The position numbers and the translations under genes are program-made. The notes under the pieces are model-generated. The model did no database searches and was not told the origin of the DNA. It worked only from the letters and a program-made list of their open reading frames with translations. Positions 1,992 through 61,848 of a stretch of DNA of 64,000 bases are shown here, in pieces (position 1 is the stretch's first letter; every line of letters starts with the position of its first letter). This stretch comes from Octopus bimaculoides (taxonomy: Eukaryota): assembly GCF_001194135.2 (NCBI RefSeq), contig NC_068990.1, positions 89,360,056 through 89,424,055 of the forward strand. Direction: 5' to 3'.

Positions 1992-6363
<4,372 letters not shown>

Positions 6364-7415: not shown

Positions 7416-8690
7416 TTAGTGAGAAGATTTCTGTCTTGTACGAATGCATTTGTGTTTATTTAACTGGCTTGACTGAGCAAATGATCTACTGCAGATATTA
7501 CAGTGAAATGGCTTCTCTCCTGTATGAATACGTATGTGTTTAATTAGGTGTTGATTTAGTGAGAATGATTTGCCACAGATATCACAGTGATACGGCTTCT
7601 CTCCAGTATGAATGCGTTTGTGTTTAGTTAAACCACTACTCCCTGATAATGTTTTACCACAGATATCACACTGATACGGCTTTTCTCCTGTATGAATGTA
7701 TCTGTGTTCAGTTAAATGATCATTTCGAGCGAATGACTCACTACAAATGTCACAGTGATACGGCTTCTCTCCTGTATGAATGCGTTTGTGTATAGTTAAG
7801 CTGCTTGATACCGTAAATGATTTACCACAGATATCACAGTGATATGGTTTCTCTCCTGTATGAGTCCGTTTATGTTCACTTAACTGATCACTCCGAGAGA
7901 CTGATTTACCACAGATATCACACTGATATGGGTATACTCCTGTATGAATACGTTTATGTATAGTTACTTGACCAACTTGAGAGAATGATCTGCCACAGAT
8001 ATCACAGTGATATGGCTTCAGTCCTGTATGAATATACTTGTGGGAAGTTAAGGTACTTCCATGAGAGAATGATTTGCCACAAATATCACAGTGATATGGC
8101 TTCTCTCCTGTATGAATACGTTTATGAATATTTAAGACACCTTTTTCAGAGAATGTTTTACCACAGATATCACAGTGATATGGTTTTTCTCCTGTATGAA
8201 TGCGTTTGTGTATAGCTAAACGAATACTTTGTGAGAATGATAAACCACAGATATCACAGTGATATGGTTTTTCTCCTGTATGAATACGTTTGTGAATAGT
8301 TAAGGTGCTTCCACAAGAGAATGATTTACCACAGACGTCACAGTGATATGGTTTCTCTCCTGTATGAACACGTTTGTGTTTGGTCAAGCTATCACTTCGA
8401 GAGAATGACTTACCACAGGTATCACAGTTGTGTGGTTTCCCAACTTTATGAGTACGTTTGTGTCGAGTTAAATAATTCATTTGAGAGTATGATTTGCTGC
8501 AAATGTCACAACGATATATTCTTTCTCCTACATGAATACATTTGTGAGTGGTGGGGTTACCTCTTTCAGAGAACGGTATTTTGCATATATCACAGTGGTA
8601 AGATGTTATTCCTATCTCTTTCAGCTTATCAGGAATATTTTTAGACTCTGTTTTAAGTTCAATTTGGTTCTCACACAATTCATTTTCCAT
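7416..8690 (-). CDS. C2H2 zinc-finger protein, 424 aa, 13 canonical fingers plus 1 degenerate finger, single coding exon
   Basis: First in-frame ATG at 8690 (MENELCENQ..); an in-frame TAG lies upstream at 8766-8768. Tandem [16 protein letters not shown] fingers with TGEKP linkers. Acceptor tttctctatttcag| at 9037 places the exon start at 9036. Confidence 0.95.
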
Positions 8691-11600
8691 AATTCTTCTG
8701 CTCTTATCACAATATTTAGAAGTTTTGGTTTTTTTATATTTTATTTCCAACAAATCATTCTTCTGCTATGATTCCATCTGGAATGCAGCAAATTCTTTTG
8801 TTTGGCAAAATATAATTAGAATGCAAAATCATCTTGCACATATTCCACACAGTGGAGTAGAGAAATTTTGCTATTAATCTCAATCCAAGAGAAATATTTC
8901 ACAATAATTCTACCATAGATTTATATAAATATGTTTATATTTGTTTTGTATAACATTTTCATTTGGTCTTTAACAAATGAGAATAAAGGATGCAGTTGAA
9001 GCAAAGAATTCTTTCATCTGAATGTCATTCAACAGTCTGAAATAGAGAAACATTATAAAATACAGAAAATACTTAGAAAAGTGGAAATTTTACATCTCTA
9101 AACTGATAAGATACCTTCACCAAACAACTGATTTATAACTAACTAAAAAATTACATCACACTTTTTTTTAGTTCCGTTTTCTATGCAGGCACAAGGGACT
9201 GGCAAGCCAGGAGGCTGCACCAGGCTCCAATCTGATCTGGCAATGTTTCTACAGTTGGATGCCCTTCCTAACACCAACCACTCTGAGAGTGTAGTGGGTG
9301 CTTCTTACATGCCACTGGCATGGGAGCTAGTCAAGCAGCACTAGCATCGGCCATGTTTGGATGATGCTTTTTACATGCTACCGGCACAGGAGCCAGTCGG
9401 GGCAGGGGAGCTGGAATTGACTGCCATCCGGAGTGGGGGTGGGGGCATCGACCAACCAACTTTGTGTAATGTCAACACATTTGTTGAATACAAGATATAC
9501 TTTCAGATCATGTTAATATCATTATATGTTAAACTCTAAAATATTGGATGATAACATTCTTTACTGTTGTTTAACTCCTTGTCAACTCTGACAGAAAAGA
9601 CTTATAATAAAAGAAGCCTTCCTGCCATGACCATCTTGTCTATCTCTGAGATATGGAATATCTAGACGTTAAGGTGTAATTCAAAGTAGATTTAGCTGCT
9701 ATTTCTTACAAGTCCAGTGACCATGTAGAAACTCCATCATTGGCTCATTCTTGTTTAGACCTAGGCTAGTCTCAGCTGAATAACCTTATGACCAAATGTC
9801 GGTTGTTTTCAAGGATGCTACAAATTTCTAAGAGATTAATCTAAAAGAACATTATATTGATGAATGACGAAAAAATGATTGAATGAATGAAGTAAAATAT
9901 TAAAAAAAGTACATTATATAAATCTCCTTCAGTGAATGACAACTGAATTTGTAAAAAATGACTCGATTTCTATCCTTCATTACCTCATAATTGTTGCAGC
10001 TCATTCACAATAATTTTATTGTAGGTGTATTTTATGAATATACATCAGATGTATAATTGATCAACTTTGATTAAGTGATTAGACATACGACATATGAAAG
10101 TGGAGGAGTCAATAAAATATGGTCTGTCGTAGCAAAAAATTACTGCAATATGTATCCAAATGTGTATATGTGAGCGTATACACACACACAGATAGATAGA
10201 TAGATAGAGCTGCTGTAACAGGTAAAAGACATACTTAAAGTTTGTAAGAGAGCATTATGAAGTCATAAGAAGGGAAACTAGACATCAGGTATAATTAGCT
10301 GCAGATTCTGCAACATGAGGATCTGAGACATCAGGTGTACAAGATTGCAACACTGTGTTAGAAAGAACTGAAATCACACAAGAGAAGTGCTATTATGAAA
10401 TGTGAAGAATGAATAGAACAAAGAAGGGCGACCTCAGTGCAGGAAAACATGGCACAAATGATAGTTCAGCATCTCATGTTCACTCTACAGATGGACTAGC
10501 AACTGTGCAGACTACAGGTCCATCAGAGATAGTTGCTTTATCTGAGATGTTTGAAGTATCTGGCATGGTAATACATGATAGTCACACCCAGTGACAAGCA
10601 TAGCAGTGTCACTGAAAACTGCTACGATTTGTAGGGTAGGTGTAAGGGGCCAGTTTGAACGTAAAACAGGTAGAACATTTGCACTGGATAAGGCCAGTTT
10701 AAATTTTGTTTGATAATGAAGATTCAGTTGTTCACTCAAGTGGAATACCTGCTCATTGAATTAGCATTGATGTGGTTGAATATTTCACAAGCCTTAATAT
10801 AATTCTCAGGTACAATCAATATGACAAGGCTGTACTGGTCCATCCACCAGGCTTCCACACAGTTTCTGTCTAACAAAGTTCGCTCACAAAGGTAAAAGAC
10901 ACTCTGTACAGAGGAGGGTGTGTGATCAAGAAGTTTGCTTTTCAACTATTTGGTTTCTGGTTCGATCCTATTACACTGCACAGTGGGCATCTATTATAGC
11001 CTCAGACCGACCAAAGCCTTCTGAATGCTTTTCGTAAATGGAAACTAAAGGAAGCCCGTCGTATACACACACATATATGCATATGTGTGTGGTTGTGTTT
11101 CTTTGTCTTAACATCGCATGATAGTTAACAAACGACATCGTTATACATGTAATGCGGCAACAGGAGGGACATCCAGCTATAGAAATTCTTCTTCAACGAA
11201 TGCCGTCCGACACATACGAACACAGAAAAGTGGACGTTAAAACAATGAAGTGCAGAAGATAAACATGTCGTGAGATCCAATCCGCAGTCTAGTGATTATG
11301 AAGAGAACTGCTTTATCATTCGGCCATGCTGCGTCATAAAATGATTTCAAATTTTAGCAGAAGTATAGCAATTTTGAGGGGAGCTTAATCGAAGCCTTCG
11401 ATCCCAATAATCGACAGATACTTTATTTTATCGACCCTGGAGGGAAAAATGGAAAAGTTGATCCCGACAGAATCTGAACTCAGAACGTAATGAATTCGGA
11501 ATATCGCTATGCATAAAATACTTAACAGAGAAAATATCAAACTGTTTTCCTTCCTTTTACATACACAAGGATATATTTGTTTCACATATTCAAAATGAAA

Positions 11601-14525: not shown

Positions 14526-17500
14526 TTACTTTTTATATGTAACTTTACATGTGGCAAGATTAGACCAATCTAAATGGTATTTTTCAAATGATATTTTAGC
14601 AGAGGTGTAATAAGATTTATTATTAACTTTCTCTTTTGATTTATCTAAGTAGTTTTCGCTTTTTATGGTGGGTACTTCTATTTTGTTGAAATGTTTACCT
14701 GGAAAACAAAACATAAAAAAAAAGCAAGTAAGAAAGAAAAGATAAAAAGAAGAAAACAAAGCTAATTCAATGTGAACGATATACAAAGCATTGTAATTTA
14801 TTATTACCTACGCCTTACTGAAGGTGGAGGTATTGTTTCAGTTGCGTTTGTTTGTTTGTCTGTCCGTGGACAAGGTATCTCAAGAACCGCTGGATGGATT
14901 TGGATGAAACTTTCAGGGATGTTTGGCCTTGTAACTGGCATGAACTGATTAGATTTTCAGATTGATCTGGAACCAGACAAAGATTCTGGATTATTTTTCC
15001 TGTTTTTTTACTTAATGTTTGAGAGCAGTCAGGTTCATTTTTAGTATTCTCGTTTGTGAGAACAGTCGAGTTTATTTCAGATATTCTCATTTTAAAAATC
15101 ATCTCTGGCTAATCGTTGAGAGGATGTTGGTGTTGCCTTGGCAGAGGTTTGCACTCTCTGAGTGCTCTTGTTTAAAATTTCATTAGATTTCACTCATCCC
15201 TCCCTTTCCAAATGCCAATGATAGTAGCTAAAGGCTATTTATTCAAACATAGACATGCATATGTACAAGCATAGGCACAGGACACATATGCATAAACATG
15301 AACTCATTTACATAGTCTTACAAGAATTTTTAGTTGAATGGATCAATCCCAGGACTTATTTTCTTTCTTCTCTTTTTTGGAAGCCTAGTACTTCATTTCT
15401 CAGTCTCTTTTGCCGAACAGCTTCGTTATGGGGATGTAAGCACACCAGTTGTTGAGCAGCAGTGGGCAACAAACACACACACAAACACACACCACACACA
15501 CACTCAGAGATTTTCATGGAGGTAATGACAAGTGATTGAGACCTTTGTTGTTTTGCTGTGCTTGAGAAGACACATCAAGCCAAGTGAACTTGTAGTCGTG
15601 GCCAGCGCTAGTGACACATAAAAGGCACCCATGCCACTGACATGCAAAAAACACCTACTACACTCTAGGAGTGGTTGGTGTTAGGAAGAGCATCCAGCCA
15701 TTGAAACCAAGCCAAATCAGAAACCAATGTCAGCATGGAAAACAGATGCTAAATGGTGATGATATGTGTTTTTGTGTGATGGGCTTCTTTCAGTTTCCAT
15801 CAATCAAATCCACTCTAAAGGCTTTGGTTGGCCCAAGTCTATGGTAGAAGACACTTCCCCAAGGTGCCACACAGTGGAACTGAACCTGGAACCATGTGGT
15901 TGGGAAGCAAACTTCTTACCACATGTATATTTATTTATTCATAACCCATGCTGTGTAAGTACTGGAATAATAACTGACAGGCTGTACAGTTCACTTGAAT
16001 GGGTCACGAAAATGACACCTTATGTCTCATATATGCATGGAACAACTGCACAAAAAAAAAAAGAAAAGAAAAAACAAAAAAAAACACTAGCTGATACTAG
16101 CTTAGGTCATGAAGAAATGAAGAAATGAAGAACACGGTCTTGTTAAATGGGTTTGAACTCACAACTCTCACATTAAAACTGATGATCTACCAATTGAACC
16201 GTGTTCTATCTTTAGTTTACTCCTTAAATGCAACAGAAATTATCAAGATTTTTGCTGCTCACCTTCAATTGTCTGACTATTCATCACGCAGTCAGTAGCA
16301 ATTTGTTTGTAAGCATGGGGCAGGTATAAAAGCATCTGTTTCGCAGAAGAGTTTACGGCATTCTCCAAAACAGGGTTTGAAAGTAGGTTCTGCAATAACA
16401 AACAGCAAAGCATTGAATGAAAATTTTAAGTTAGATTCTCTGAAAAATTTGCTTGCCATTCAACCTGCAAATTCATAAACCATAACTGGGTCTTCTGGCT
16501 GTTTACCAAAATAGTCTCTCCCATTCTTTTCCCAATCACCTTAGTCACCACTCTTCAATCAAGGAAATTCAATAAACAACACTTCCACTGACAAACTCTT
16601 TGCATTTGCAATCTGTACTCAACAAAATTGGCTCATTTGTAGGTAGTTGTTGGAAGACATGTAGAGTGATGGAAAAGAGTTTGTCACTTTAGTGTAGTTA
16701 GGTTGGTGTTTCACCACACTGAATTCTCATCCACTCATGGCTATTTTAAAACCCAAAATCATTCAAATAAGGACATTCATTCATGAGATTCTAGCTCCAC
16801 TCTGTGTGGTATAAACTGACCTCATATCAAATCAAATGAAACCATTATGGCTTTGGGTTCAATCCCCATCTGAAACCAGCCATGGAAGCCACCAAATTAA
16901 AAAAAAAGGGTCGCATCTACTACACTTTCTTCTCTGACCAACTTATTTAAATAAAAGGAAAATATGAAATGAGACACATTACTTGAACATATAAAAGGAT
17001 GTTTAAAACGTAGAGTCCCTTCTTTTCTATTAAACCAAAATCCAACTGAACCTTTCCATTTGCAGGATCAACTGAAATGAAACATTGGAATCAAGAATTA
17101 ACAACAACAACAACAATCCTTTCTGCTATAAGCACAAGGCCTGAAATTCTGGGGGTGGGGTATAATTGATTATATCAACCCCAGTGCTCAACTGGTACTC
17201 GTTTCATCAACCCAAAAAGGATGAAAAGCAAAGCTGATCTCGATGGAATTTGAACTCAGAATGTAAAGAACAATGAAATATCACTAAGCATTTTTGCCTG
17301 GCATGCTAACGGTTCTGCCAACTCACTGCCTTAGCAATAATTTTGGCACAAGGCCAGCAATTGTGGGAGGGGAGATAAGTCAATTTCACCGACCCCCCAG
17401 TACTCAACTGGTACTTATTTTATCAACCCCAAAGGGATGAAAGGCTAAGTCCATCTAGGCAGATTTTGAATTCAGAATGTAAAGACATACGAAATATCAC

Positions 17501-19893
17501 TGAGCATTTTTCCTTAACGATTCTGCTGGCTTGCTACTTTATCAATAATAACGATAATGATAAATTAATTAATGAAGTGAAATTTGGTTGACAAAGAGAG
17601 AATGGAAGGCCACTGGGAGGACTGTTCCTGTTCTTGGATGGTAGGTTTAATCCATAGCTCAGTTTGATGTCACCTGGTCTGTGGGTGCCTTTAGCAGAGT
17701 CCATTCTGATGTAAACATTTGGATCAGATACCCAGTCTGATAATAACTGTCTCCTTCCCTCCCACCAGTTTCGAAAACACCAAAAAAGGGTCACTGGTGA
17801 CTCCCTTCCCTTTTTGACCAAGTCATTAAGCCCCNNNNNNNNNNNNNNNNNNNNNNNNNNNNNNNNNNNNNNNNNNNNNNNNNNNNNNNNNNNNNNNNNN
17901 GAAAAGATAGCCTTTAGAGCAAGTAACTTGATTACTTACCATTCGGGTGGAATGGTATGGTGCAGAATGAGATTTCAGGTTCCCTTATTGCTTTATTGGG
18001 TGAAAACTGAAGGAATAGAGTGAAAACACCACCTGATAAAGAGAAGGGTTATCAGTATCATTATCATCATCATCACCATCACTTACACCACCACCTCTGC
18101 CAATACCACCACCACCACCGCCACTGCTGCCACCATCATCACCACTGCAGTCACCATCACCACTACCATTATCGTTGTTGCCATAGCTACTGCCACTGCT
18201 ACCACCACCGTCTTTTTTATTAATGCTAGTATGTGGTTTGTCAATCTACTAGAAATAGTAGCCAAATATCAATCTATTATTTAGTTTTTTTTTTTAAAGA
18301 AGACAGACGTATTAGGTAATACAGCCCTAAAAGATGCAATGCCTGGAATAAAGGGGGAATGGTCATGTCTGGAATACCTTGGAATTAGATAAAACACAGC
18401 AGCAGTTGCCACTGCCGTTGCCGCCATCATCATTATATTGATCAGTTATAGTATCATAATTATGACTGTAAGTAACAAGAACACTATAAACATCACCTCA
18501 TTACCATAATTATCATCATCATTGTTATGATCATTATCATATCATCATCATCATCATCACTGCTGCTGGCCACCACCACCATTATCAGCATCAACTCTTT
18601 ATAGTAACCACTATCTTCGTAATTGTCATCGTCATCATAAGAATCCTTACGATCGACAAGAGCACCATCACTATGAAATTCCTTGCTGCTGTCATATTAC
18701 ATGAGGAGGTGAGCAGGAGGCTTTTTCTGGATGGATTTGCAGGCAAATGCACAGGTTTGTGTGGTTTCCAGGGCATTATTACCAAGATCACACCCAACAC
18801 TTAGTAACATCTACGGAAATCTGATACCAATATCCCTCAAGCTAAAGCAGAGGAAACGACTACAATCTGCTGGCCTCTGTCGTCGAGCAGAGAAAGAGGT
18901 TGTCTCATCCCTGCTCCTATGGCATCCCTCTGGAAGTGTTTTCTCCAGGAAACTGACATTTCCAGATCCTATATCTCAGGACTCAAGGATGAAAGGCAAA
19001 GTCAGCCTTGGTGGAATTTGAACTCAGAAAGTAAAGACGGATGAATTGCCACAAAGCATTTTGCCCAGTGTGGTAACGATTCTGCCAGCTCACCACCTTA
19101 TATAACAACAACAACAACAACAACAACAATAATATTTACCATTCCAAAGTGAACTTCTTAAACCTTTTATCTTGGCAACCCAATCAAAAATGTTGTCAGG
19201 AGAAATCAGACTGACTTCAATTCCCTTGAAAGGAAAGAAAACAGAAATTAGTTCTAAAAATTTTATTACCTTCCAATATGTTGATTAAACACCAGTCAAC
19301 TCTCACCCAGCAGACTTATGATCAAAGGCGTTCCAACCATGACCATCCTGTCAGTCAGTAGATATATATTCCCTGGTAGCACCAATGTTGTTTGGCAGTG
19401 TTGGAAGGATATAGCTTTTATTTTTTACTTGTTTCAGTCATTAGATTGTGGCCATGCTGGGGCACCATCTCAAAGAATTTTTAGTCGAATGAATTGATCC
19501 CAGGACTTATTTTTTGTTTAAGCCTGGTATTTGTTCTATTGGCCTCTTAGGCTGAACCACAAAGTCACCAGGATGTAAACACACCAACACCAGTTGTCAA
19601 AGTGGTGGTGGGGAACAAACACAGACAAAAAGAAACACACACACACACACACGACAGGCTTCTTTCAGTTTCTGTCTACCAAACCCCACCTACAAGGATT
19701 TGATTGGCCGGAGGCTATAGTAGAAAACACTTGTCCAAGGTGCCATGCAGTGGGACTGAACTTAGAACCATGTGGTTGGGAAGCAAGCTTCTTACCAAAC
19801 AGCCAAGCCTGTACCTGAAATCATCTCCATGCCGGGAATTGAACCTGGGTCACCTCGATGAAAGCCAGGAAGCCTAAATACTAGACTATATAT

Positions 19894-19954
<61 letters not shown>

Positions 19955-20022
19955 TATGTATNNNNNNNNNNNNNNNNNNNNNNNNNNNNNNNNNNNNNNN
20001 NNNNNNNNNNNNNNNNNNNNNN

Positions 20023-20084
<62 letters not shown>

Positions 20085-21060
20085 CAGCTGTGGCCAAAAG
20101 TTTGGAACATTTGTTTAAAAATTAAAATTGTTATGCCCAAGTACAACACAATTCAAATACATACAACGTGGAGATATACTTACCTAACAATTGATCTGAT
20201 TGTTCAATATCTAGAAGAGAAAATAGGCAAAATCAAAAATATAGTTCTAGACCAAATTGCTTACTTTTAATTTAACTTTAGGCATTTAATATAAAATTCT
20301 AATTTTCAAACCTATGTTCCAAACCTTTGGTCATGACTGTAAATATACATCAAAATATATGTGTATATAATATTCGTTTATGTATTTGTTTTGAAAGATT
20401 CTTGATGTGAATTCATGTGTTGAAACAGATATTGTTGTATTTGTAGATGGTTGTGTTGCCAGTTTAGCCAATGAAAACACACACACTATATTATATTCGG
20501 TGTTCACTTGCTTCAGCTTTATTTCATATTAATCGTATTTCAGCCAGAGTTCTTTCGTCACACTTCTGTGACCTCATAAGTGGTCCTTTGCTTTTTACTT
20601 TCTTTTTTGTCTCCCCTTCCTAATGCTTTGCTATTTTGTATTCCTGTTGTATGTGTCTTTATTTGTGTATGCATATAACCCCCAAATACAACAATATATA
20701 TATATATGGAGATAGATAGATGCATATGTGTGTGTGTGTGCATGTATAGTTTTGGTGATGCAAACAAGAAAATAGAATTCAAATGTTGCATACAGTTGAT
20801 CCAATCAATAGAACAGCCTGCTCATGAAATTAATATACAAGTGGCTTAGCACTCCACAAACATGTGTACCCTAATGTATTTATGAAGTGATCTTCTTAAG
20901 CATGCAGCTGTTACTGAAGAATTAAAATATAGACAAAAAGAAGAAAAAGATACAAGAAATAAATAGAACAAAAGATCAGTTGTGTTTGTGGAATAGTTAC
21001 CCAGGTGGAAAACTTTTGGATAGCACTGAACTCTTTCTCAAGTAATGCACTGGACAACAT
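14526..21060 (-). CDS. UBE2U: UBE2U-like ubiquitin-conjugating (UBC-fold) protein lacking the catalytic cysteine, about 208 aa, 6 coding exons
   Basis: Exons (-): 21060-21001, 19224-19140, 18032-17940, 17071-16983, 16389-16263, 14698-14526, all GT-AG with phases 0,1,1,0,1. Protein MLSSALLEKEFSAIQKFSTWGIEVSLISPDNIFDWVAKIKGLRSSLWNGGVFTLFLQFSPNKAIREPEISFCTIPFHPNVDPANGKVQLDFGLIEKKGLYVLNILLYVQNLLSNPVLENAVNSSAKQMLLYLPHAYKQIATDCVMNSQTIEGKHF..KISFEKYHLDWSNLATCKVTYKK*. TIPFHPNVDP, LSNPVLEN.VN and ISF..Y...WS..AT match my recollection of UBE2U. The 3' end is uncertain (alternative donors at 14549 and about 14529). Confidence 0.85.
14804..15172 (+). mobile_element. Helentron-associated non-autonomous element (HINE/DINE-1-like)
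   Basis: Begins ttattacctacgcc..ggtggaggt followed by (GTTT)n-gtctgtcc and gatggatttggatgaaacttt; ends ttggcagaggtttgcactctctgagtgctcttgtt. This is the typical architecture of the family. Confidence 0.6.
15330..15925 (-). mobile_element. tRNA-derived SINE (family A) interrupted by an RTE-LINE 3' fragment
   Basis: SINE tail 15330-15500 and head 15770-15925 on minus, separated by about 15510-15765 matching the RTE 3' UTR seen at 43620-44080. Confidence 0.6.
17120..17535 (-). mobile_element. Two tandem SINE family B copies
   Basis: Both match the reverse complement of 63719-63932 (gaatttgaactcagaatgtaaag, ccccagtactcaactggtact). Confidence 0.75.
19418..19812 (-). mobile_element. Full-length tRNA-derived SINE (family A)
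   Basis: Colinear with the reverse complement of 44123-44530 (head, CA-rich middle, gactgaaacaagtaaaa tail). Confidence 0.75.
19825..19896 (-). pseudogene. tRNA-Glu(TTC) pseudogene
   Basis: Minus: ACCATATATAGTCTAGTATTTAGGCTTCCTGGCTTTCATCGAGGTGACCCAGGTTCAATTCCCGGCATGGAG. Close to eukaryotic tRNA-Glu with anticodon loop CTTTCAT, but the D-loop GG is lost and the acceptor and anticodon stems have mismatches. Confidence 0.75.
20085..20339. mobile_element. Tc1/mariner-type MITE
   Basis: TIRs cagctgtggccaaaagtttggaaca / tgttccaaacctttggtcatgactg flanked by TA on both sides (20083-84, 20340-41). Confidence 0.85.
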
Positions 21061-21194
21061 TTTGGGAACTGTAGATGTTATCATAAATAATATTGAACTT
21101 TCTTCCTAGTTCATGACAGCAATTTATTAATCATTATTCTTCATATGAGCAGAGTAAAAGGCTGAAATACATAAATAAACAATATATACAAACA

Positions 21195-25383: not shown

Positions 25384-25815
25384 NNNNNNNNNNNNNNNNN
25401 NNNNNNNNNNNNNNNNNNNNNNNNNNNNNNNNNNNNNNNNNNNNNNNNNNNNNNNNNNNNNNNNNNNNNNNNNNNNNNNNNNNNNNNNNNNNNNNNNNNN
25501 NNNNNNNNNNNNNNNNNNNNNNNNNNNNNNNNNNNNNNNNNNNNNNNNNNNNNNNNNNNNNNNNNNNNNNNNNNNNNNNNNNNNNNNNNNNNNNNNNNNN
25601 NNNNNNNNNNNNNNNNNNNNNNNNNNNNNNNNNNNNNNNNNNNNNNNNNNNNNNNNNNNNNNNNNNNNNNNNNNNNNNNNNNNNNNNNNNNNNNNNNNNN
25701 NNNNNNNNNNNNNNNNNNNNNNNNNNNNNNNNNNNNNNNNNNNNNNNNNNNNNNNNNNNNNNNNNNNNNNNNNNNNNNNNNNNNNNNNNNNNNNNNNNNN
25801 NNNNNNNNNNNNNNN
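25384..25815. other. Assembly gap between the UBE2U-like and ZGLP1-like genes (other gaps include 17835-17900, 56011-56251, 60754-60988)
   Basis: Run of N. Confidence 1.
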
Positions 25816-35519: not shown

Positions 35520-35540
35520 ATCTCTCTCTANNNNNNNNNN

Positions 35541-36442: not shown

Positions 36443-37491
36443 ATCATTTACTTGTAAAAGATACTTTAATATGACAACTGCTTTACTTGCCACTTCAATA
36501 AAAAAATTGTACACAAGTCTGTCTGGTAAATATGCTACTAGGATAAGATATATATTCCAACTTTGTTTCTGAAAGTGAAGGGCAGAAAATAATGATTTAC
36601 ATAATTGCCAGAAAATAAAGCTGCTGAGATTATTTTACCTGCTCCAGGAACAAATATTTCCATTCAACATCGGGTGTAACATATATATATATATATANNN
36701 NNNNNNNNNNNNNNNNNNNNNNNNNNNNNNNNNNNNNNNNNNNNNNNNATAAGTTTTTAAAATTAAGCACCTTTTGTTCAAATTCCAGCTTATGGTGGTA
36801 GCAATGGCTAATTCAGTAGAATGGCAGACAGAATTTGTTACATTTCATCCTCTCAGTTTTGGGTTCAAGAACTGTCAGGATCAGCATTGTTTTCTGTCCA
36901 TTCAGATGTTTGATTGAACAATTAGTAATCAGATATTTGGGTGGACAAATCCATTCATCTTTCTAATATATCCCACTCTACCAATTTTTTTTGCCAACAT
37001 CAGTGTGATGTTTCATTCAGAGCAGGAGCAAACTGTTGCAAGTGTAGAGTAGTGGACTAAATATCTTAGAATATTTAGTTTCATCTCCTTTCATCCTTAA
37101 TTCAAATCCTATTGGAATTGACTAAACCTTTTCTCTACCCACGATTGATGGGTATTAATATACTGGGATTGATTCAGTCAGTTCTATCCCTTCTTTACAA
37201 ACACTGGCCTTGTAAAGACTTAAAAGCCATTATTATGTTGTAAAGTTTATAATACCTCAGACTTCTAGTCTTTTGAATTTGGTATGTATTTTGCCATATT
37301 TCTTATAAAGAATAAGAAAGAATTTTAATTCTGTCTTTGTTATAGTTTAACAATTTTTTTTTCTCAGGATTTTATTTTATTATGGATTTATGTTTTTATT
37401 TTTGAAGCTGATAACTTCAACAGGGAATTACTTAAGTACTTGAGCTTTGCATCTCTACTTTGTAAATTCAGATGCACTTCGACTCTGTCTG

Positions 37492-40147: not shown

Positions 40148-40771
40148 ATGGCAGATATAAATGCTCAACAGAAATTGATGAAATGTCGAGCTTATTTAGA
40201 AGGCAATCCAACCGACGTTAAGGTTAATATCAACATTAATATTTAAAAAACAAAATCCATTACGTTACAGTTCATTGTTTTTATAGATTTCCATTTAGAT
40301 TTAAAAAAACACATCGTAAGCAAAATTATAGATATTTCTTTATTATTTTTATAATTTATAGGAAAGGACCCATTCTTCTTTCATCGTGTTTATATATTTT
40401 TCCATTCGATCTTCTTATGATTTTTCTATCACGTTAGACTCTTCGTTGATTGTTGGGACTAATTAATATTGTTCAGGTGTGTATATCCAACCCGATTACA
40501 TGTTTAACTTGGATTCAACAAACACCGATGACTATTATACACACCAAAATGCAATATATTTGTGTCGTTATATATACATTTCTATTTCAATCGCCCCTCC
40601 CTCTCTTTATAAATAGAAGTGCGTTTATCTCTATATACCTACAGTATATCTATCTATCTATCTATCTATCTATATGATTGTAATGTTATCTACCTGTCTT
40701 TCACACACGCATACATATATACACACACACACACGCATACATACATACATACATATATATANNNNNNNNNN

Positions 40772-44300: not shown

Positions 44301-47300
44301 ATGTGTATGTGTGTGTGTGTTTGTATGTCTGTGTTTGTCCCCCCAACATCGCCTGACAACCGATGCTGGTGTGTTTATGTCCCCGTAACTTAGTGGTTCG
44401 GCTATAGAGACCGATAGAATAAGTACTAGGCTTCCAAAGAATAAGTCCTGGGGTCGATTTCTTCGACTAAAGGCGGTGCTCCAGCATGGCCGCAGTCAAA
44501 TGACTGAAACAAGTAAAAGAGTAAAAGAGTATAGGATATATGTATAGGTATTGCTTCAAGATGTGTCATCCAACCCATGTCAACAGAGAAAACCAGATGT
44601 AAAATGATGAGGATGTTATATACATGTATGTATATGTATCTTATAAAGATGATTATGCATCAGTGTGTATATACGTAACTGAAATAACTTCTCTTTCTAT
44701 TCACCTCCCTAAACTTACACCATTTCTAAAGGCAAGCACTTTGTTGAAGTAATGGACTGATTATTTTACTTGTTCATCAACCAATGTGTCTATTTTTCTT
44801 TTCTCTATCAAATTGATGTTTATCATAAGTTTATCTTTAAAAAGTGTGTATTTTTAGAGCATGAATTAAACAATTTTTTTGATTTCTTGATTTCTCATTG
44901 CAGTTGCTTTACATTTTTAACAAATTATTACGGTTCCCAGTTACTATTGATATTTTACAGGTAAGAACATTGATAATTATGTTTATTCATTGTGTTATTA
45001 TTCTAAGGTGGTAAGCTGGCAGAATCATTAGCGTGACTGGCAAAATACTTAGTGGTTTAAACCTTAATACAAAAAGTCATTGCTTTATTTTTCTTGCTCA
45101 TAGCACATATTCTGCTTGATTTTATGCTCCAGCCTTATTTCACAGTTGAATGGTTAAAAATAGGAAGGGTATTGCAAAGTTGAAAAAACAATTGTGCCAA
45201 TAAGAAAACCGTCTCATTTTCTTTGATGGCGTAGGTTGAATAGGTTGTTGCAGTCCAAGTCAGTCCTTGGTGAGCTCCCTAGCTGGGTCTAAGGTTCTTC
45301 ATTCAAATCTAATCCAGAACCTAGTGCATATCCTGGAAAGTTCTGAACATCTGATGACAATCAGGCAGCAAACTATAGCACAGATATATAACAATAATAA
45401 ATAGTAAATACACACTTTAAAGATGAGATTGATTGTCTTGTTAATTGTAATGTTAGTAATAACAAACACCTGAGACATTGAGTTAGATGAAATGTCTATC
45501 GATCCACTTCATTTAACAAAACAGAACACAAGTCCTATATCTACTGTGATTAGTAGTAGCGAAAGGGCATCTATTTTTATTGGCTCCAGTAAAAATGAAA
45601 TAATTTCACTCATTTTTGGAGGGTAGGCACCCATAACTACTGCAGGTTGGTGAAGTTGATGATGTTGCTGTCCAGTTTCAACATCTGCATTTCGATGCCT
45701 ATAATTGTGTATTCAGCACTGTTGATAATTAATTGGAAAAAAAGTTTATCAGAATGGTAAACTGAAGAACCATATATTTTTTGTCTTTTTGTTTGTTTTT
45801 AACAACTTGACATGGTTACCCCTTTTGATATTAACTTACATGAAACAACCTTTAGTTGTACGATACAAATTGCCTGTTTTAAATTGATCTAAATTGAAAC
45901 TTTCCATTAAAATTTTGTGTCAAACTATATTCCAGACACAATTCTAATAATGAAAAAGTTATTGTAATAAAGCCTTCATTATTTTCAAAATAAAAATTGA
46001 AACAAAGGTCAATAAATACCATGCCAGTCCAAACGGGTGATTTTGGGAATTATTAGAGCATTGGATGAGATGACTTGTGGTATTTTTTCTGTTCATTGTG
46101 TTTTGAGGTCAAATTCTACCTAAGGTGCTGATGTGTAGAGCTAATTACTCAACTACAAAAGTGCTCTGGTCAACCTGCAGTTGGCCAATGTTGGTTTAGA
46201 GACAGGTTGGCTTATAGTTAGAACCTCCATTGGACAAAGTCGACCATTTATCCATAGATGTATGTATAGGCTTAGGCAAGATTTTTTGAGGAAGACTGCC
46301 AGTTGCCCATGTTAGCATGTCTCCCCTCTCCATGACACCGGTGTTTAGCTAAGGGAACGGCTGCTGACTTAGGCTGATACAGTTTGGCACTGGTCTCGTC
46401 ACAGATGTTGCTGTCAGAATGTAAAGAGCCAGAGCAGATACCAATCTTCTAACCTTTGATTTGTACTTTTTGTCCTGAAACTATGCAGGACAAAGGTGAC
46501 CTTAGGCAAAATTTGAATTTAAAGTACAAAGAGTCAGAACAAGTGATGCAAGCCATACTGTCCGATGCTCCAATGACTTCACTGCCTTGCTGGGCTTATA
46601 ACCACCATAGATAAGTTGGTAATGGTATGCTGAAGCCATCAGTCAGCAGTAGAACAACACTAATTGAATGGAACTAATGTAGGTAATGTTTTTTCTTATG
46701 TTATTGTTTTTTTGTCATTTTGCCAGATGACTGGAATTGGAAAAGCTGTCAACTCATTTAGAAAGCGTGAAGGTGAGATTGGGGAGAAAGCACGAGCAGT
46801 GGTAACTTTGTGGAAATCTCTAGTGTCAAAACAAGAAAACAATCTCACAGACAAACGGTCAGTAAGTAGTAGTTCATCTCCATATAATTCCACATCCACG
46901 GAACAATCTGGCAAGACTTCATCTGATGATGAGAAAACCACTCCTTGCCGAACAAAACGTCAGTCTTCTCCTCAATCTTCTCCTCAATCTTCTCCTCAAC
47001 CAAGATCTTCCACAAAAGAATGTGATAAAACTTCTGAAAATATCAAAGAGAGGAAAAAGCACCAGAGCAGCAAAAGCAATTCAGAGACTTCCCAATCACC
47101 AGAAAAGAAAAACAAAACTGCCAGTGATTCAAGCAAAGAACATCATCACAGTTCAAAGAGTAAAAGTGAGTCTGAGAGCAAAACAAAAGTAAAGAAATCA
47201 CAGAATCTCAAAGGGAAGAAAAAATCTGCAGAAGATGGCTTGAGTTTTGAGGACTTTATGAACTATGATGATTCATCAATGAAGAAAAAGTTTAAGAAAA

Positions 47301-50300
47301 GGAAACATGACAAAGATGATAGTAGTAAGTCTTCAAAAGAAAGGAAAGAATTGAACTCTTCTAAAGTTAGTAGTAAAAGTCATTCTTCAAAATCTTCATC
47401 TTCTTCCTGTTTACAATTAAGTAAAAAATCCAAAGAGCCTAAAAGTAGCACATCTCAGGTTTTACATGTGCCTTCAGCTTCCAAAGAGGTAAGTCTTAAA
47501 ATCATTTTGTTATAATTAAAAGCAGCGGATGATGAATTGAACTGATAAACACAGTTCTATATTTTAAGAGATGAGCAATTATGTACATTATTTACATTTG
47601 ACGGATATTTGTCCCCATCTTGTTTGTTGTGAACACAATGTTTTGGCTGATATACCCTCCAGCCTTCATACCAGGTGTCTTGGGAAAATTTTGAACCTGG
47701 GTTCTCATTCTAAAAAAAAAAAAGGACCATGGGTATATCTATCCCTCTATCATACTCTAACCTCTCACCTGGCATACAACCACTTGCCTTGGTCCCGCTC
47801 TCAACTAAGCGAACCTTGTCTTGCAAGTTTCTCGGTGACCCCTGTAGTGCCATGTAAAACAGCACCTGTGCCAGAAACAGTTAAAAAGCACTTGTACCAG
47901 TGCTACACTACCCATAGCCCCCAGTACTCTCTGCACAGTGTTTGGCATTAGGAGTGACATCTAGCCATAGAAACCATGCCAAAACAGACAATTGGGATCT
48001 GGACAGCACTCCAGCTGGCCAGCTCCTGTCAAACTGTCCAACCCATGCCAGCATGGAAAATGGACGTTAAATGATAGTGATGAAGGATCATCAGTCTTTT
48101 TTCAGAATAAAAGGGCAAGAGAAAAAGATGTAGAGAGTTTAGTAATGAAGTGTAGAGTGTATCGATTTTTCCCTCAGCGTCTTTTCCTTCTCTTTCTTTT
48201 GTTCTTCTAGCTAGAAGGATGTATCATAACAGAGAGAGAGAGAGAGAAATGGTGTGTGTGTGTCCGTGTTTGTGTGTATAAGGAAGAGAGAGGAAAAGAG
48301 AGTGAGAGAAATGGGAATAAAAAGGGAGTAAGGGATATGGGAGAAAGAGAGTGATCTGAAGTATTTATGTATTGCTATTTTAGGGAAAATGCAAAATATA
48401 TAAATGTTCTTTGAATTAACTAATCTCCTGGTTCTGTTCCTTTATCTTTGATTCTTCCAGCTTCTTCCTTCTGAATCTGAAATATTGAGTTCTTTACCAG
48501 AAACTCAGGCCCATTACCATCCATGGAGACTCAGTGATGCTAACAAAGTAGAACGGAAAGCAGTGACAAACAGTAAGTAACTTATCAATGAATTGATACG
48601 GTTTTCGGTGTAAATTCCTTTCTTATCAAGTCTTTTGTGTGATGATGAAAAGCTTGGTGGAAACAGGGCCACACTGTGAATGTTCCTGACCCTTCCAGTG
48701 TAAATGAAGCCTAGCACAGGCCTGGCTGCCCTGTTAAGAAATTTGCTTTGCAACAACGTTGTTTAAGGTTTGATCTCATAGAGCACTTTGAGCTAATGTT
48801 TACTACTGCAACCAATGTCACATGAGTGGATTCTTATTGATGGAAACCTGATGTGTATATACATACTACATATGCACATACCTAAACATGCACACACATG
48901 TGCATTCTGTTTGTGCTTGTTGATAAATTCACCAACTGAAAGAACTCAGTACATTGGGGTGTTATGAATATTTTATAAGCAGTGTCTTAAATGGTATCTG
49001 ACAACAACTTGAGTTTCACATCTGAGGGCAGATATCTGGCTTGGTTTGGGTCAATCCAAAGTCTCTCCACCTTTTCCAATTCTCAGACTGCCTTGTTTCA
49101 TTACACAAAATAGCTGGTGGTAATGTGAATGACTGATAAGCAAGGCAGGTGGAAAGTGCTGAACAACTTTTGGTAAACAAAGTGAAGAAAAATATTGCTG
49201 AAGCCTTCTTGGCTTGATACAAAGAGGCATTTAATTCTATTCATCACTCATAGTTGCTGGAGATACCATACTTAATGAAAGCACCTTAATTGCTGCTATT
49301 GAAAGTCTCTCAAAGACCAGTTTAACATTCCTTGAATTTGTGACTGGATGTAGAAAGGTTGTCTTCAGTACTTTAAATCTTTCAAAAGCAATATGTCACA
49401 GTAACAATTGATTTTTCTTTCTGTTATGTCTAAACGCTACTGCTATCTAGCACCTTCGGATGATCTCTACTCAACCGCTACTCAACACACTACCACGGCT
49501 AGGCCACCTCTATTTATATGTCTTGGGAGATCCTACTTCTTTACCTGGGGGTGTCGACACAACACTTTCAGTAATTTTTAATAGTCTGGGCAACTGTTCT
49601 TTGCAAATAGTAGTCCTTTAATGTTGGTCCAAGTCACCAAGTGCCCTTGAGTCACCTGTAGTATTGTCAAACATTCATAAAATGTTAAAATCCAAATTTA
49701 GTGACTCACAGCATCTGTTGGCCCTGGGAGAGAAACAATTCTTGAACCATTCTTTAAATACAGATTTTGCAACCAGAGCTGGGAACCATTGTTATGTCAG
49801 TTGTAAACATGTCAATCTTCAATTTTTATCCTCTGCTAGATTTCAATATTCACATACATACATTTATATACACACACAAACACATATATATATTTGAGGT
49901 TTCTGTTAATTACTGGGATGTCCCTCTCGTTTTTTTCTCTTTAGGTGGTGATGATCTCGATTCTGTGCTTATTGGAATTAAATCAAGAACACGAGAATGT
50001 GTGTATTCTGGGAAGAAAGCAGCTTTAAAAGGTAACTGGTTTCATTTTATACACTCTACCCTCATTTCACTTATATATATCCCGGTCTTACTTCATACAT
50101 ACTCTGGACTCATTTTACACATTACCCACTTTACCATTGTATTTCTTTGTGCACTGTTATGAAGTAAATGATTCAACTATGACCGAATATATTTTTATAA
50201 CAAATATATATTATTATGTAGCTTTCAAGTTTTATTCAGCTGTAAGTCCATACATTCTTCATCCAGTTCAGGCAGCTCTTTGGGGGCCTCTGGGACTGAT

Positions 50301-55731: not shown

Positions 55732-56451
55732 AAAGAAAAAAAAACCCCACTTGAAAAGAATGATTATGACAAAATCATTTGCCCTTAATATTTTTTCTCA
55801 AGTTTTTATTTTAATTCTAACTTCACGCCCTCTCTCTTCTTACTCTCTTCAAATCCCTCGTCACATTTTAAATTATCATTTACCTAATTTATATAAGTTT
55901 TTTTTATAATTTCTATATAAAATTGTATAATAATATTTTTCTGATTTAAAAAAGAATCAAATTTTTTCTTTCTTTCTGTTTTTTTTTTGTAACTGGAACT
56001 CTTGAAAATGNNNNNNNNNNNNNNNNNNNNNNNNNNNNNNNNNNNNNNNNNNNNNNNNNNNNNNNNNNNNNNNNNNNNNNNNNNNNNNNNNNNNNNNNNN
56101 NNNNNNNNNNNNNNNNNNNNNNNNNNNNNNNNNNNNNNNNNNNNNNNNNNNNNNNNNNNNNNNNNNNNNNNNNNNNNNNNNNNNNNNNNNNNNNNNNNNN
56201 NNNNNNNNNNNNNNNNNNNNNNNNNNNNNNNNNNNNNNNNNNNNNNNNNNNGGGCCTGCTATAAATTATCATTAATACCATTATTGAGAATGGAACAAAG
56301 AAGTGTTAAGCTCCTGGCAAGGCAAGTCAAGTGGTTTGGTTTCAATTCCTAGCCAAAGCCAGCTTACTTATGCCATTAACATCTTTGATAAACACATTAA
56401 CATCACCTCCTCCCTTCCTCCAAAAGTTGCAGCCTCGTGGGTAAGTTAATG

Positions 56452-61622: not shown

Positions 61623-61848
61623 NNNNNNNNNNTGAAAGAGAACTAATCACACTAAACGTAATGCCTCAGCCTCTGCTTGAAATCAGTGAAAAGTAAAAGA
61701 TGTGGCTGTGTGGTAAGAAGCTTGCTTCCCAACCACATGGTTCCGGGTTCAGTCCCACTGTGTGGAACCTTGAGTAAGTGTCTTCTACTATAGCCTCAGA
61801 CCGATCAAAACCTTGTGAGTGGATTTGGTAGACTGAAACTGAAAGAAG

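What the first reader, a model, noticed from the sequence alone, without database searches (positions are those of the whole stretch)
16983..17071. UBE2U-like E2 with Gln in place of the catalytic Cys: a candidate pseudo-enzyme hidden from the ORF track
Seen: the spliced product reads HPNVDPANGKV-Q-LDF. Established: in E2s the active Cys follows HPN at this position (UBE2U-type HPNVDPxTGxP-C-IDF), and Cys-less UEV proteins act as scaffolds or ubiquitin binders. The codon is CAG (17048-17046), which differs from TGT at three positions and from TGC at three, so it is not a single-base error, and A-to-I editing would give Arg. The downstream Trp and the Y-x3-PP motif are also lost, but HPN, six exons, all splice sites and the frame are intact. 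Inference: a maintained, catalytically dead UBE2U derivative, possibly a lineage-specific UEV-like protein; I know of no description of one.
Basis: partly seen in the sequence, partly recalled or inferred. Interest (0 to 1): 0.85.

Follow-up and report, generated by a model that had tools for sequence, protein, structure and literature searches.

The report
Cysteine-less UBE2U gene in octopus
The octopus copy of the ubiquitin-conjugating enzyme gene UBE2U really has glutamine where the catalytic cysteine should be. Other octopods and a cuttlefish also lack the cysteine, so this is probably an old, still-intact but fast-evolving non-enzymatic relative of an enzyme, and many other UBE2U lineages have lost the cysteine too.

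Summary
Window 17071-16983 (minus strand) is exon 4 of a six-exon gene. Its product is identical to NCBI's Octopus bimaculoides "ubiquitin-conjugating enzyme E2 U isoform X1". Codon CAG (17048-17046) aligns with the catalytic Cys of human UBE2U (PDB 1YRV).

The change is not an error or a missing exon:
- O. sinensis and Argonauta hians have the same exon lengths, GT-AG sites and a CAG at this position.
- The 66-N gap in intron 3 corresponds to about 25 bp in O. sinensis.

A cuttlefish ortholog has Gly (GGA) at this position and is found as spliced mRNA. The Cys loss therefore probably predates octopods. Octopods additionally lost the YN..PP loop, the Trp loop and about 115 C-terminal residues.

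Constraint is real but weak:
- Octopus versus Argonauta: dN about 0.4, with synonymous sites saturated.
- Between the two Octopus species: dN/dS 0.39-0.66, not clearly below neutral, but no indels where 5.7 were expected.
- A Cys-retaining mussel pair: 0.04-0.07.

The case is not unique. 32 of 102 UBE2U-family cluster representatives lack the Cys, including rodents (Ser), rotifers, a sponge and flagellated fungi.

Verdict: a new, undescribed member of the Cys-less E2 (pseudo-E2) kind. Octopus transcription and function are unverified.

The parts
21001..21084 (-). Exon 1, coding part. The NCBI isoform X1 start ATG is at 21084 (MITSTVPK...). The ATG conserved in O. sinensis and Argonauta is at 21060 (MLSSALLEKEFSAIQKFSTW). 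The donor is gtaact.
   Evidence: start of P0001 compared with P0002/P0004
19140..19224 (-). Exon 2 (85 nt), encoding GIEVSLISPDNIFDWVAKIKGLRSSLWN+G. It has an AG acceptor and a gtaaat donor.
   Evidence: the exon is 85 nt in O. sinensis, Argonauta and Sepia as well
17940..18032 (-). Exon 3 (93 nt), encoding GGVFTLFLQFSPNKAIREPEISFCTIPFHPN+G. It carries the retained HPN motif. The canonical E-x-Y-N-x-x-P-P loop (L4) is replaced by SPNKAIREP. NCBI isoform X2 skips this exon.
17835..17900 (.). A 66-N assembly gap inside intron 3, between the HPN exon and the Gln exon.
   Evidence: The orthologous O. sinensis intron has no gap; the N run plus 32 unaligned bases beside it correspond to only about 25 bp there. 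The Argonauta intron 3 is 495 bp with no N.
16983..17071 (-). Exon 4 (89 nt), the flagged feature, encoding (V)DPANGKVQLDFGLIEKKGLYVLNILLYVQ. It is 6 nt shorter than the Sepia exon (95 nt), and the Trp loop (L7) is lost.
17046..17048 (-). The CAG (Gln) codon at the position of the catalytic Cys.
   Evidence: The same CAG is present in O. sinensis and Argonauta. Sepia has GGA.
16263..16389 (-). Exon 5 (127 nt), encoding NLLSNPVLENAVNSSAKQMLLYLPHAYKQIATDCVMNSQTIE+G. The LLSNPVLENAVN stretch is identical to that of vertebrate UBE2U.
14526..14698 (-). Exon 6, coding part (173 nt). It holds a disordered linker, the family-specific motif ISFEKYHLDWSNLATCK, and a TAA stop at 14528-14526. The stop is at the equivalent position in all three octopods. 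Sepia continues for three more exons.
   Evidence: tblastn finds no trace of the Sepia or Mytilus C-terminal exons downstream.

Best explanation
This is the Octopus bimaculoides ortholog of UBE2U. It has become a non-catalytic UBC-fold protein, a pseudo-E2 that resembles UEV proteins in kind but arose independently of them.

Shown:
- The canonical thioester Cys is replaced by Gln in three octopods and by Gly in a cuttlefish.
- The UBC fold, the HPN loop, the LLSNPxLxxAxN segment beside the former active-site cleft, and the family-specific C-terminal motif SFxxYHxxWxxxATCK are all retained.
- The gene structure and reading frame are conserved across octopods.

Inferred:
- The Cys was lost first, in or before the common ancestor of cuttlefish and octopods, or twice in parallel.
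- Octopods then lost surfaces that an enzyme needs and a scaffold does not. These are the conserved Arg and two residues of helix 1, the YN..PP loop L4, and the Trp loop L7. From established knowledge of E2s, these are the usual E1 and RING contact sites. Octopods also lost the last roughly 115 residues.
- The protein therefore cannot carry ubiquitin at the canonical site.
- It most likely acts by binding a partner through the conserved cleft region and the C-terminal motif. By analogy with mammalian UBE2U expression, this would probably be in reproductive tissue.
- It is under much weaker constraint than catalytic orthologs.
For: - Identity and anatomy.
- Predicted UBC fold: pLDDT about 88-96 over residues 11-150, and TM-score up to 0.87 (normalised to the target) against solved E2 structures.
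- Gln (CAG) in O. bimaculoides, O. sinensis and Argonauta, with identical exon lengths 60/85/93/89/127 and all introns GT-AG.
- No hidden or alternative Cys exon.
- Long-term constraint: Octopus versus Argonauta has pN 0.31 against pS 0.76-0.79 (saturated), 47-49% amino-acid identity and no frame disruption.
- Recent constraint: no indels in the coding sequence against 5.7 expected from introns, P = 0.003.
- The cuttlefish ortholog has Gly (GGA). It is 330 aa with 9 exons and shares its first five intron positions with octopus. It is present as spliced mRNA contigs in at least 6 sequencing runs.
- Stepwise loss of motifs.
- All 26 non-cephalopod UBE2U proteins from the first search keep Cys, Trp and YN..PP.
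- The Pfam score falls from 114-115 bits (mussel, amphioxus) to 105 (Sepia) and 65-72 (octopods).
- Relaxed selection: dN/dS 0.39-0.66 (Octopus pair) and 0.33-0.51 (Sepia pair), against 0.04-0.07 for a Cys-retaining mussel pair.
- In human UBE2U, mutating the Cys (C89A) did not affect RING (MDM2) binding, so non-catalytic binding is plausible for this family (PMC2736652).
Against: - No biochemical test: loss of charging is inferred from the missing Cys alone.
- Transcription of the octopus gene was not verified. No Logan cDNA contig encodes the octopus protein, whereas the cuttlefish protein has many.
- Between the two Octopus species, amino-acid-level constraint is statistically indistinguishable from neutral. 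The gene could therefore be decaying in that genus.
- NCBI's exon-3-skipping isoform and a chimeric O. vulgaris gene model may indicate sloppy expression.
- Both RING-contact loops are remodelled in octopods, so the binding partner cannot be inferred from human data.
- No squid, Vampyroteuthis or Nautilus sequence was obtained, so a single ancestral loss is not proven.
Confidence: 0.62

Rival explanations
1. The gene is a relic on its way to becoming a pseudogene. It lost its function with the Cys and is now drifting in Octopus. The open frame survives only because not enough time has passed, or because of weak residual selection.
For: - The Octopus pair has dN/dS 0.39-0.66. Nonsynonymous changes are 27 of 43 against 0.718 expected (P about 0.07-0.13). 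Coding divergence is 6.9% against 8.2% in introns.
- This is roughly 6-10 times more relaxed than the mussel orthologs.
- Motifs and the C-terminal third have been lost progressively.
- No octopus cDNA contig is in the collection.
- There is an exon-skipping isoform and a chimeric O. vulgaris model.
Against: - The frame, the exon lengths and all ten splice sites are intact in three species whose synonymous sites are saturated relative to each other.
- The stop codon is at the equivalent position in all three.
- There are no indels against 5.7 expected (P = 0.003).
- Long blocks (TIPFHPNV, LLSNP, ISFE.YH.DW.N.ATCK) are still conserved from Octopus to Argonauta.
- The Cys-less cuttlefish ortholog is expressed and spliced.
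Confidence: 0.22
2. The protein is still an enzyme and uses a different nucleophile. Candidates are the cephalopod-specific Cys in the C-terminal motif (ATCK instead of ATSK) and the octopod-specific Cys in ISFCTIPFHPN. Either would relocate the ubiquitin-accepting residue.
For: - Among about 145 family sequences that carry the motif, a Cys after A-T occurs only in the cephalopod sequences, which are exactly the ones that lost the canonical Cys to Gln or Gly.
- HPN and the LLSNP loop around the cleft are retained.
Against: - There is no structural evidence that the motif reaches the cleft. It has only pLDDT about 53-55 in the model.
- Sepia lacks the ISFC Cys.
- Other Cys-less lineages, such as rodents, rotifers and fungi, show no such compensating Cys.
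- In octopods the helix-1, L4 and L7 surfaces that an enzyme needs for E1 and E3 contact are degraded.
- To my own knowledge, no E2 with a relocated active-site Cys has been described.
Confidence: 0.06
3. The finding is an artefact. Either the Gln is a sequencing or assembly error, or the true Cys-bearing exon lies in the assembly gap or elsewhere.
For: A 66-N gap lies in the intron immediately upstream of the Gln exon.
Against: - The same codon and exon are present in two independent genome assemblies of other species.
- The gap region corresponds to about 25 bp in O. sinensis.
- tblastn with canonical exon-4 peptides from human, mussel, snail and cuttlefish finds only this exon in the window and in both orthologous loci.
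Confidence: 0.01

Closest known systems
Human UBE2U (PDB 1YRV), a class III E2 with a C-terminal extension
   Same: It is orthologous. It is the best PDB sequence match (E 5.7e-22). It shares the TIPFHPNVDP, LLSNPVLENxVN and SFxxYxxxWxxIATxK motifs. The named best hits are all UBE2U.
   Different: The octopus protein has Gln instead of Cys89. It lacks the Trp loop and the YNYAPP loop. It ends after the first C-terminal motif, at 208-216 aa against 321 aa (length of the human protein from PMC2736652).
UEV proteins (UBE2V1/UEV1A, UBE2V2/MMS2) and the TSG101 UEV domain
   Same: They have a UBC fold without the catalytic Cys and act by binding rather than catalysis (established knowledge). PMC2736652 notes that UBE2V1 and UBE2V2 lack the Cys.
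   Different: The origin is independent. The octopus protein is closest to UBE2U, keeps HPN and all four helices, and matches only Pfam UQ_con, not the UEV family. No Ubc13-like partner is known.
UBE2NL, a lineage-restricted UBE2N-like human protein that lacks the ubiquitin-accepting Cys
   Same: It is a young, lineage-specific Cys-less derivative of an otherwise catalytic E2 family (PMC2736652).
   Different: It comes from a different parent family. The cephalopod case is the ortholog itself: no Cys-retaining UBE2U copy was found in octopus among the database hits.
Other natural Cys-less UBE2U orthologs found here
   Same: They belong to the same family and keep the HPN and C-terminal motifs while the catalytic Cys is replaced. 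They are:
- rodents with Ser: Mesocricetus, Dipodomys, Acomys, Grammomys, Thomomys
- cuttlefish with Gly
- bdelloid rotifers with Lys or Gly
- the annelid Dimorphilus with Ser
- the sponge Oopsacas with Asn
- the flagellated fungi Sorochytrium and Blastocladiella with Ser, and Paraphysoderma with His
   Different: Almost all of them keep the Trp, the YN..PP loop and the long C-terminus. Ser variants could in principle still form an oxyester. Among the named taxa, only the octopods combine Cys loss with erosion of L4, L7 and helix 1 and truncation.

Membership tests
UBC / E2 superfamily (Pfam PF00179 UQ_con) | A significant match to the UBC-core profile over its full length | tested here: met
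   72.5 bits against a cut-off of 27, E 3.4e-20, profile positions 2-139 of 140.
UBC / E2 superfamily (Pfam PF00179 UQ_con) | The UBC fold: N-terminal helix, four-stranded sheet and C-terminal helices | tested here: met
   The AlphaFold2 model has pLDDT about 88-96 in the core. Foldseek matches E2 structures with TM-score up to 0.87 normalised to the target, probability 1.00. This is a prediction, not a solved structure.
Catalytically active E2 enzyme | An active-site Cys about 8-10 residues after HPN | tested here: not met
   Gln (CAG 17048-17046) is aligned to the Cys of 1YRV and of 26 UBE2U orthologs.
Catalytically active E2 enzyme | The HPN triad | tested here: met
   TIPFHPNV is invariant in all cephalopod and other orthologs.
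Catalytically active E2 enzyme | Formation of a ubiquitin or ubiquitin-like thioester with E1 | not testable with these tools
   This needs an in vitro charging assay.
UBE2U family | Closest relatives are UBE2U orthologs rather than other E2 families | tested here: met
   All named hits are UBE2U. 1YRV has E 5.7e-22 and the next E2 has 1.7e-14.
UBE2U family | The family-specific motif SFxxYxxxWxxxAT(S/T)K after the UBC core | tested here: met
   The octopus motif is ISFEKYHLDWSNLATCK. S196, Y200, W204, A208 and T209 are invariant across 29 orthologs.
UBE2U family | Gene structure shared with a bona fide UBE2U | tested here: met
   The first five introns are at the same positions and phases as in Sepia pharaonis UBE2U.
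UBE2U family | The long C-terminal extension ending in ExEVxxLxxWxxxL | tested here: not met
   It is absent from all three octopods, and no remnant was found downstream.
UEV family (UBE2V1/2 and TSG101 type) | A UBC-like fold lacking the catalytic Cys | tested here: met
UEV family (UBE2V1/2 and TSG101 type) | Specific sequence homology to UEV proteins or the Pfam UEV family | tested here: not met
   Only UQ_con is matched, and the nearest relatives are UBE2U. The protein therefore works like a UEV at most; it is not a member.
Unitary pseudogene | Frame disruptions, lost splice sites or premature stops | tested here: not met
   There are none in O. bimaculoides, O. sinensis or Argonauta. No indels were found against 5.7 expected.
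Unitary pseudogene | Neutral substitution pattern (dN/dS about 1) | tested here: inconclusive
   The Octopus pair gives 0.39-0.66, and the empirical test is not significant. Octopus versus Argonauta is clearly below 1.
Unitary pseudogene | No transcription | not testable with these tools
   No RNA-seq mapping tool was available. Only the cuttlefish ortholog was shown to be a spliced mRNA.

The most novel reading that the evidence does not exclude
The conserved job of the UBE2U family as a whole does not depend on thioester catalysis. The catalytic Cys has been replaced independently in many lineages: coleoid cephalopods, rodents, bdelloid rotifers, an annelid, a glass sponge, chytrid and blastocladian fungi, and many unnamed microbial eukaryotes. 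That is 32 of 102 family clusters. Meanwhile HPN, LLSNP and the C-terminal SFxxYxxxWxxxATSK motif stay nearly invariant. The octopod protein would then be the most reduced natural 'minimal' version, and it would show which parts carry the non-catalytic function. The family's presence in flagellated fungi and its reported testis and urogenital expression in mammals hint at a role in flagellated cells.
Probability: 0.3. Interest if true: 0.65.

Novelty: new member of a known kind. Interest (0 to 1): 0.45.

Why it matters
UBE2U is one of the least understood E2s. In 2009 it had no reported conjugating activity, yet it was the most connected RING interactor in a human two-hybrid screen (PMC2736652). 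A natural series now exists: Cys retained (mussel), Cys lost with everything else kept (cuttlefish, rodents), and Cys lost with the E1/E3-contact loops and the tail eroded (octopods). This series points to which surfaces matter for a non-catalytic role. It offers ready-made constructs for charging and binding assays. It also warns that automated 'ubiquitin-conjugating enzyme E2 U' annotations in cephalopods, rodents and other lineages name proteins that probably cannot conjugate through a thioester.

Tried and rejected
1. Alternative or mutually exclusive Cys-bearing exon. I ran tblastn of the human (from memory, used only as a lead), mussel, snail and cuttlefish proteins against the whole window and against the O. 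sinensis and Argonauta loci. Only the Gln exon and chance hits containing stops were found.
2. Hidden exon in the 66-N gap. The orthologous O. sinensis intron is gapless, and the gap region corresponds to about 25 bp there.
3. Sequencing error. Rejected, because three species agree.
4. Dating the loss with squid or Nautilus. The second and third homolog searches, with the Sepia protein and with its UBC core, returned almost nothing: 2 hits and 1 hit. The second was run with an E-value cut-off that was too strict, and the third did not even recover the query. No decapodiform other than Sepia was obtained, and no Nautilus.
5. The unnamed Ser-type protein P0049, which was the second hit of the Sepia search. 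Its identities show it is not specifically cephalopod-like.
6. Octopus transcripts in Logan. The exact-sequence clusters of the O. bimaculoides and O. sinensis proteins contain only the genome records. Transcription therefore remains unverified.
7. Divergence time of Argonauta and Octopus. It was not stated in the paper I opened, so I rely on saturated synonymous sites instead.
8. Selection on the Gln itself. At 47% overall identity, conservation of one residue is not informative.
9. tRNA scan of the window. It found nothing.
Full report
**1. Observation**

On the minus strand, positions 17071-16983 form an 89-nt exon flanked by ...tttcag| and |gtaatg. It reads (G)TT GAT CCT GCA AAT GGA AAG GTT CAG TTG GAT TTT..., with CAG at 17048-17046. 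The upstream exon (18032-17940) ends in ...ACC ATA CCA TTC CAC CCG AAT G|gtaagt, so the spliced product is TIPFHPN-V-DPANGKVQLDF.

I located six exons at 21060-21001, 19224-19140, 18032-17940, 17071-16983, 16389-16263 and 14698-14526. All introns are GT-AG, and the ORF is 627 nt.

The first database search showed that the window comes from Octopus bimaculoides. My model is identical to NCBI's 'ubiquitin-conjugating enzyme E2 U isoform X1', which starts 8 codons further upstream at 21084. The gene is therefore annotated. What is not annotated is that its product lacks the catalytic residue.

**2. Family assignment**

- Pfam UQ_con is matched end to end (72.5 bits, cut-off 27).
- The best solved structure by sequence is human UBE2U, 1YRV (E 5.7e-22, with the next E2 at 1.7e-14). 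Gln is aligned to its Cys.
- An AlphaFold2 model built on 29 orthologs gives a confident UBC core (pLDDT about 88-96 for residues 11-150). The linker is disordered, and there is a short low-confidence helix over the C-terminal motif.
- Foldseek finds E2 structures with TM-score up to 0.87 normalised to the target.

**3. Is the Gln real, and is a Cys supplied from elsewhere?**

I fetched the orthologous loci of O. sinensis (89% identity) and Argonauta hians (47-49%) and rebuilt their coding sequences.

- Both have exon lengths 60/85/93/89/127, canonical splice sites, a stop at the equivalent position and CAG at the Cys position.
- A 66-N assembly gap lies in intron 3, just upstream of the Gln exon (17835-17900). 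The O. sinensis intron has no gap, and the missing stretch corresponds to about 25 bp. The Argonauta intron 3 is 495 bp with no N.
- tblastn with canonical UBE2U proteins found no second exon-4-like sequence in the window or in either locus.

Error and missing-exon explanations are therefore excluded.

**4. Comparison with other UBE2U proteins**

All 26 non-cephalopod orthologs from the first search have Cys, the downstream Trp and the Y-N-x-x-P-P loop. These come from corals, bivalves, a snail, amphioxus and vertebrates. The three octopods lack all three features.

An exhaustive profile search of 1.84 billion cluster representatives placed a cuttlefish protein as the closest non-octopod relative. 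This is UBE2U of Acanthosepion/Sepia pharaonis plus 96%-identical sequences from sequencing runs.

- It is full length (330 aa) and keeps Trp, YN..PP and the C-terminal domain, but it has Gly (GGA) at the Cys position.
- Contigs of about 2 kb from at least six runs encode it without interruption. One of them maps onto nine exons of the S. pharaonis genome, so it is a spliced mRNA.
- Its first five introns are at the same positions as in octopus. Exon 4 is 95 nt in Sepia against 89 nt in octopus, and exon 5 is 130 nt against 127 nt.

Cuttlefish and octopods also share two derived states: a Leu in GIExxL, and a Cys in the motif ...IATCK. In my sample of about 145 motif-bearing sequences, that Cys is found only in cephalopods.

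The simplest history is as follows. The Cys was lost in or before the coleoid ancestor, although two parallel losses are not excluded. On the octopod stem there followed:
- loss of the conserved Arg and two residues in helix 1;
- loss of the L4 loop;
- loss of the L7 loop with its Trp;
- loss of exons 7-9, about 115 residues.

**5. Selection**

| Comparison | Result |
|---|---|
| Octopus vs Argonauta | pN 0.31, dN about 0.4; pS 0.76-0.79 (saturated) |
| O. bimaculoides vs O. sinensis | dN/dS 0.39 (NG86), 0.42 (LWL85), 0.56 (ML), 0.66 (YN00) |
| Sepia pair | dN/dS 0.33-0.51 |
| Cys-retaining mytilid pair | dN/dS 0.04-0.07 (0.036 in the UBC core) |

The frame and gene structure have clearly been protected over a long time. 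Within the genus Octopus the signal is weak. I used the substitution spectrum of 4,035 aligned intron bases as the neutral model, which expects 71.8% nonsynonymous changes. The observed value is about 27 of 43 (P about 0.07-0.13). Coding divergence is 6.9% against 8.2% in introns. Introns carry 0.92 gap openings per 100 bp, so 5.7 indels are expected in the coding sequence. None is seen (P = 0.003).

The cephalopod genes are thus intact and frame-constrained, but several-fold more relaxed than catalytic orthologs. This is what is expected after an enzymatic function is lost and a less demanding one remains. It is also what is expected early in decay.

**6. The loss of Cys is not peculiar to cephalopods**

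Among 102 cluster representatives (50% identity) that carry both HPN and the family-specific C-terminal motif, 70 have Cys and 32 do not. Of the 32, 17 have Ser and the rest have Gly, Asn, Val, His, Gln, Ala, Trp, Lys, Thr or Glu, or a gap. Named examples:
- five rodents (hamster, kangaroo rat, spiny mouse, Grammomys, pocket gopher), all Ser;
- bdelloid rotifers, Lys or Gly;
- the annelid Dimorphilus, Ser;
- the sponge Oopsacas, Asn;
- the flagellated fungi Sorochytrium and Blastocladiella, Ser, and Paraphysoderma, His.

Their taxonomic scatter among Cys-retaining relatives implies several independent losses. That is my inference; I built no tree.

**7. Literature**

- No paper in the library holds both UBE2U and octopus.
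- The single paper holding both UBE2U and 'pseudoenzyme' uses the two terms in unrelated sections.
- van Wijk et al. 2009 (PMC2736652) reported that human UBE2U had no described conjugating activity at that time. It was the top RING interactor (52 partners), bound MDM2 equally well as the C89A mutant, and is expressed in the urogenital tract.
- Later papers report mouse Ube2u expression in testis and muscle but not in brain.
- I found no description of natural Cys-less UBE2U proteins.

**8. Mechanism**

- Shown: there is no canonical thioester residue, while the fold, HPN, the LLSNP segment next to the cleft and the C-terminal motif are retained.
- Inferred: the protein cannot be charged by E1 at the canonical site. 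It acts, if it acts, as a binding or scaffold subunit, like UEV proteins in kind but independent of them in origin. In octopods the classical E1/RING contact surfaces (helix 1, L4, L7; established E2 knowledge) are no longer conserved. The partner is therefore more likely to be engaged through the conserved cleft region and the C-terminal motif than through RING binding.

My confidence in the non-catalytic, still-functional reading is about 0.6. The ongoing-decay reading gets about 0.2, a relocated nucleophile about 0.06, and artefact about 0.01.

**9. Verdict**

However, the gene is already annotated, the Cys loss is older and wider than octopus, constraint is weak, and Cys-less UBE2U proteins turn out to be common. 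It is a new, apparently undescribed member of the known class of Cys-less E2-fold proteins. The family-wide pattern is the more interesting lead.

Noticed in passing
P0033-P0178; named: About a third (32 of 102) of UBE2U-family cluster representatives lack the catalytic Cys while keeping HPN and the C-terminal motif. This includes five rodent species (Ser), bdelloid rotifers, an annelid, a sponge, and chytrid and blastocladian fungi. I found no description of this in the searchable literature.
   Followed up: partly
window 14541-14555 (minus strand; LATCK); Sepia P0179 residue 211: In a sample of about 145 sequences, the conserved C-terminal motif ...IAT(S/T)K carries a Cys (ATCK) only in cephalopods. 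This is the lineage that lost the canonical Cys to Gln or Gly. It may be coincidence or compensation.
   Followed up: partly
window 17940-18032 (exon 3); P0003: NCBI isoform X2 of the O. bimaculoides gene skips the 93-nt HPN exon in frame, giving 185 aa. I could not check whether this reflects real alternative splicing.
   Followed up: no
P0009 (Octopus vulgaris): An O. vulgaris 'hypothetical protein' is a chimera. A DUF7041 segment (Pfam E 3.1e-10) is joined to UBE2U exon 3 and exon 6, without exons 4-5. It is probably a gene-model artefact or an aberrant transcript.
   Followed up: partly
window 14526-14531 (minus strand: AAG TAA): The octopod stop codon lies only 5 codons after ATCK, whereas Sepia exon 6 runs 8 codons further and is followed by three more exons. 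AAAAA|GTAAAA at the octopus stop also resembles a splice donor. No downstream exon remnants were detected.
   Followed up: partly
window 7416-8753 (minus strand): A 445-aa single-exon ORF made of tandem C2H2 zinc fingers (Pfam zf-H2C2_2 E 6.6e-104, 12 stretches) lies downstream of the UBE2U gene.
   Followed up: partly
window 46664-47515 (plus strand): A 283-aa Ser/Lys-rich ORF has an N-terminal TFIIS helical-bundle (Med26) domain (E 1.7e-07). It is probably one exon of a larger gene.
   Followed up: partly
window 2168-2177, 17835-17900, 19962-20022, 25384-25815, 35531-35540, 36698-36748, 40762-40771, 56011-56251, 60754-60988, 61623-61632: There are ten runs of N (assembly gaps) in the window. 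Two of them lie inside introns 1 and 3 of the UBE2U gene.
   Followed up: yes
window about 16860-16900 and 17180-17300, 17420-17540 (introns 3-4): Repeated interspersed elements in the introns have tRNA-like ends (for example ...ggattgaacccaaagcc...). (GTT)n and (GGT/GAT)n microsatellites abut exons 2-4. ARAGORN finds no intact tRNA.
   Followed up: partly
The word-indexed homolog search returned almost nothing for the Sepia UBE2U queries and did not recover the query's own cluster. Absence of hits from that tool is therefore not evidence of absence.
   Followed up: no
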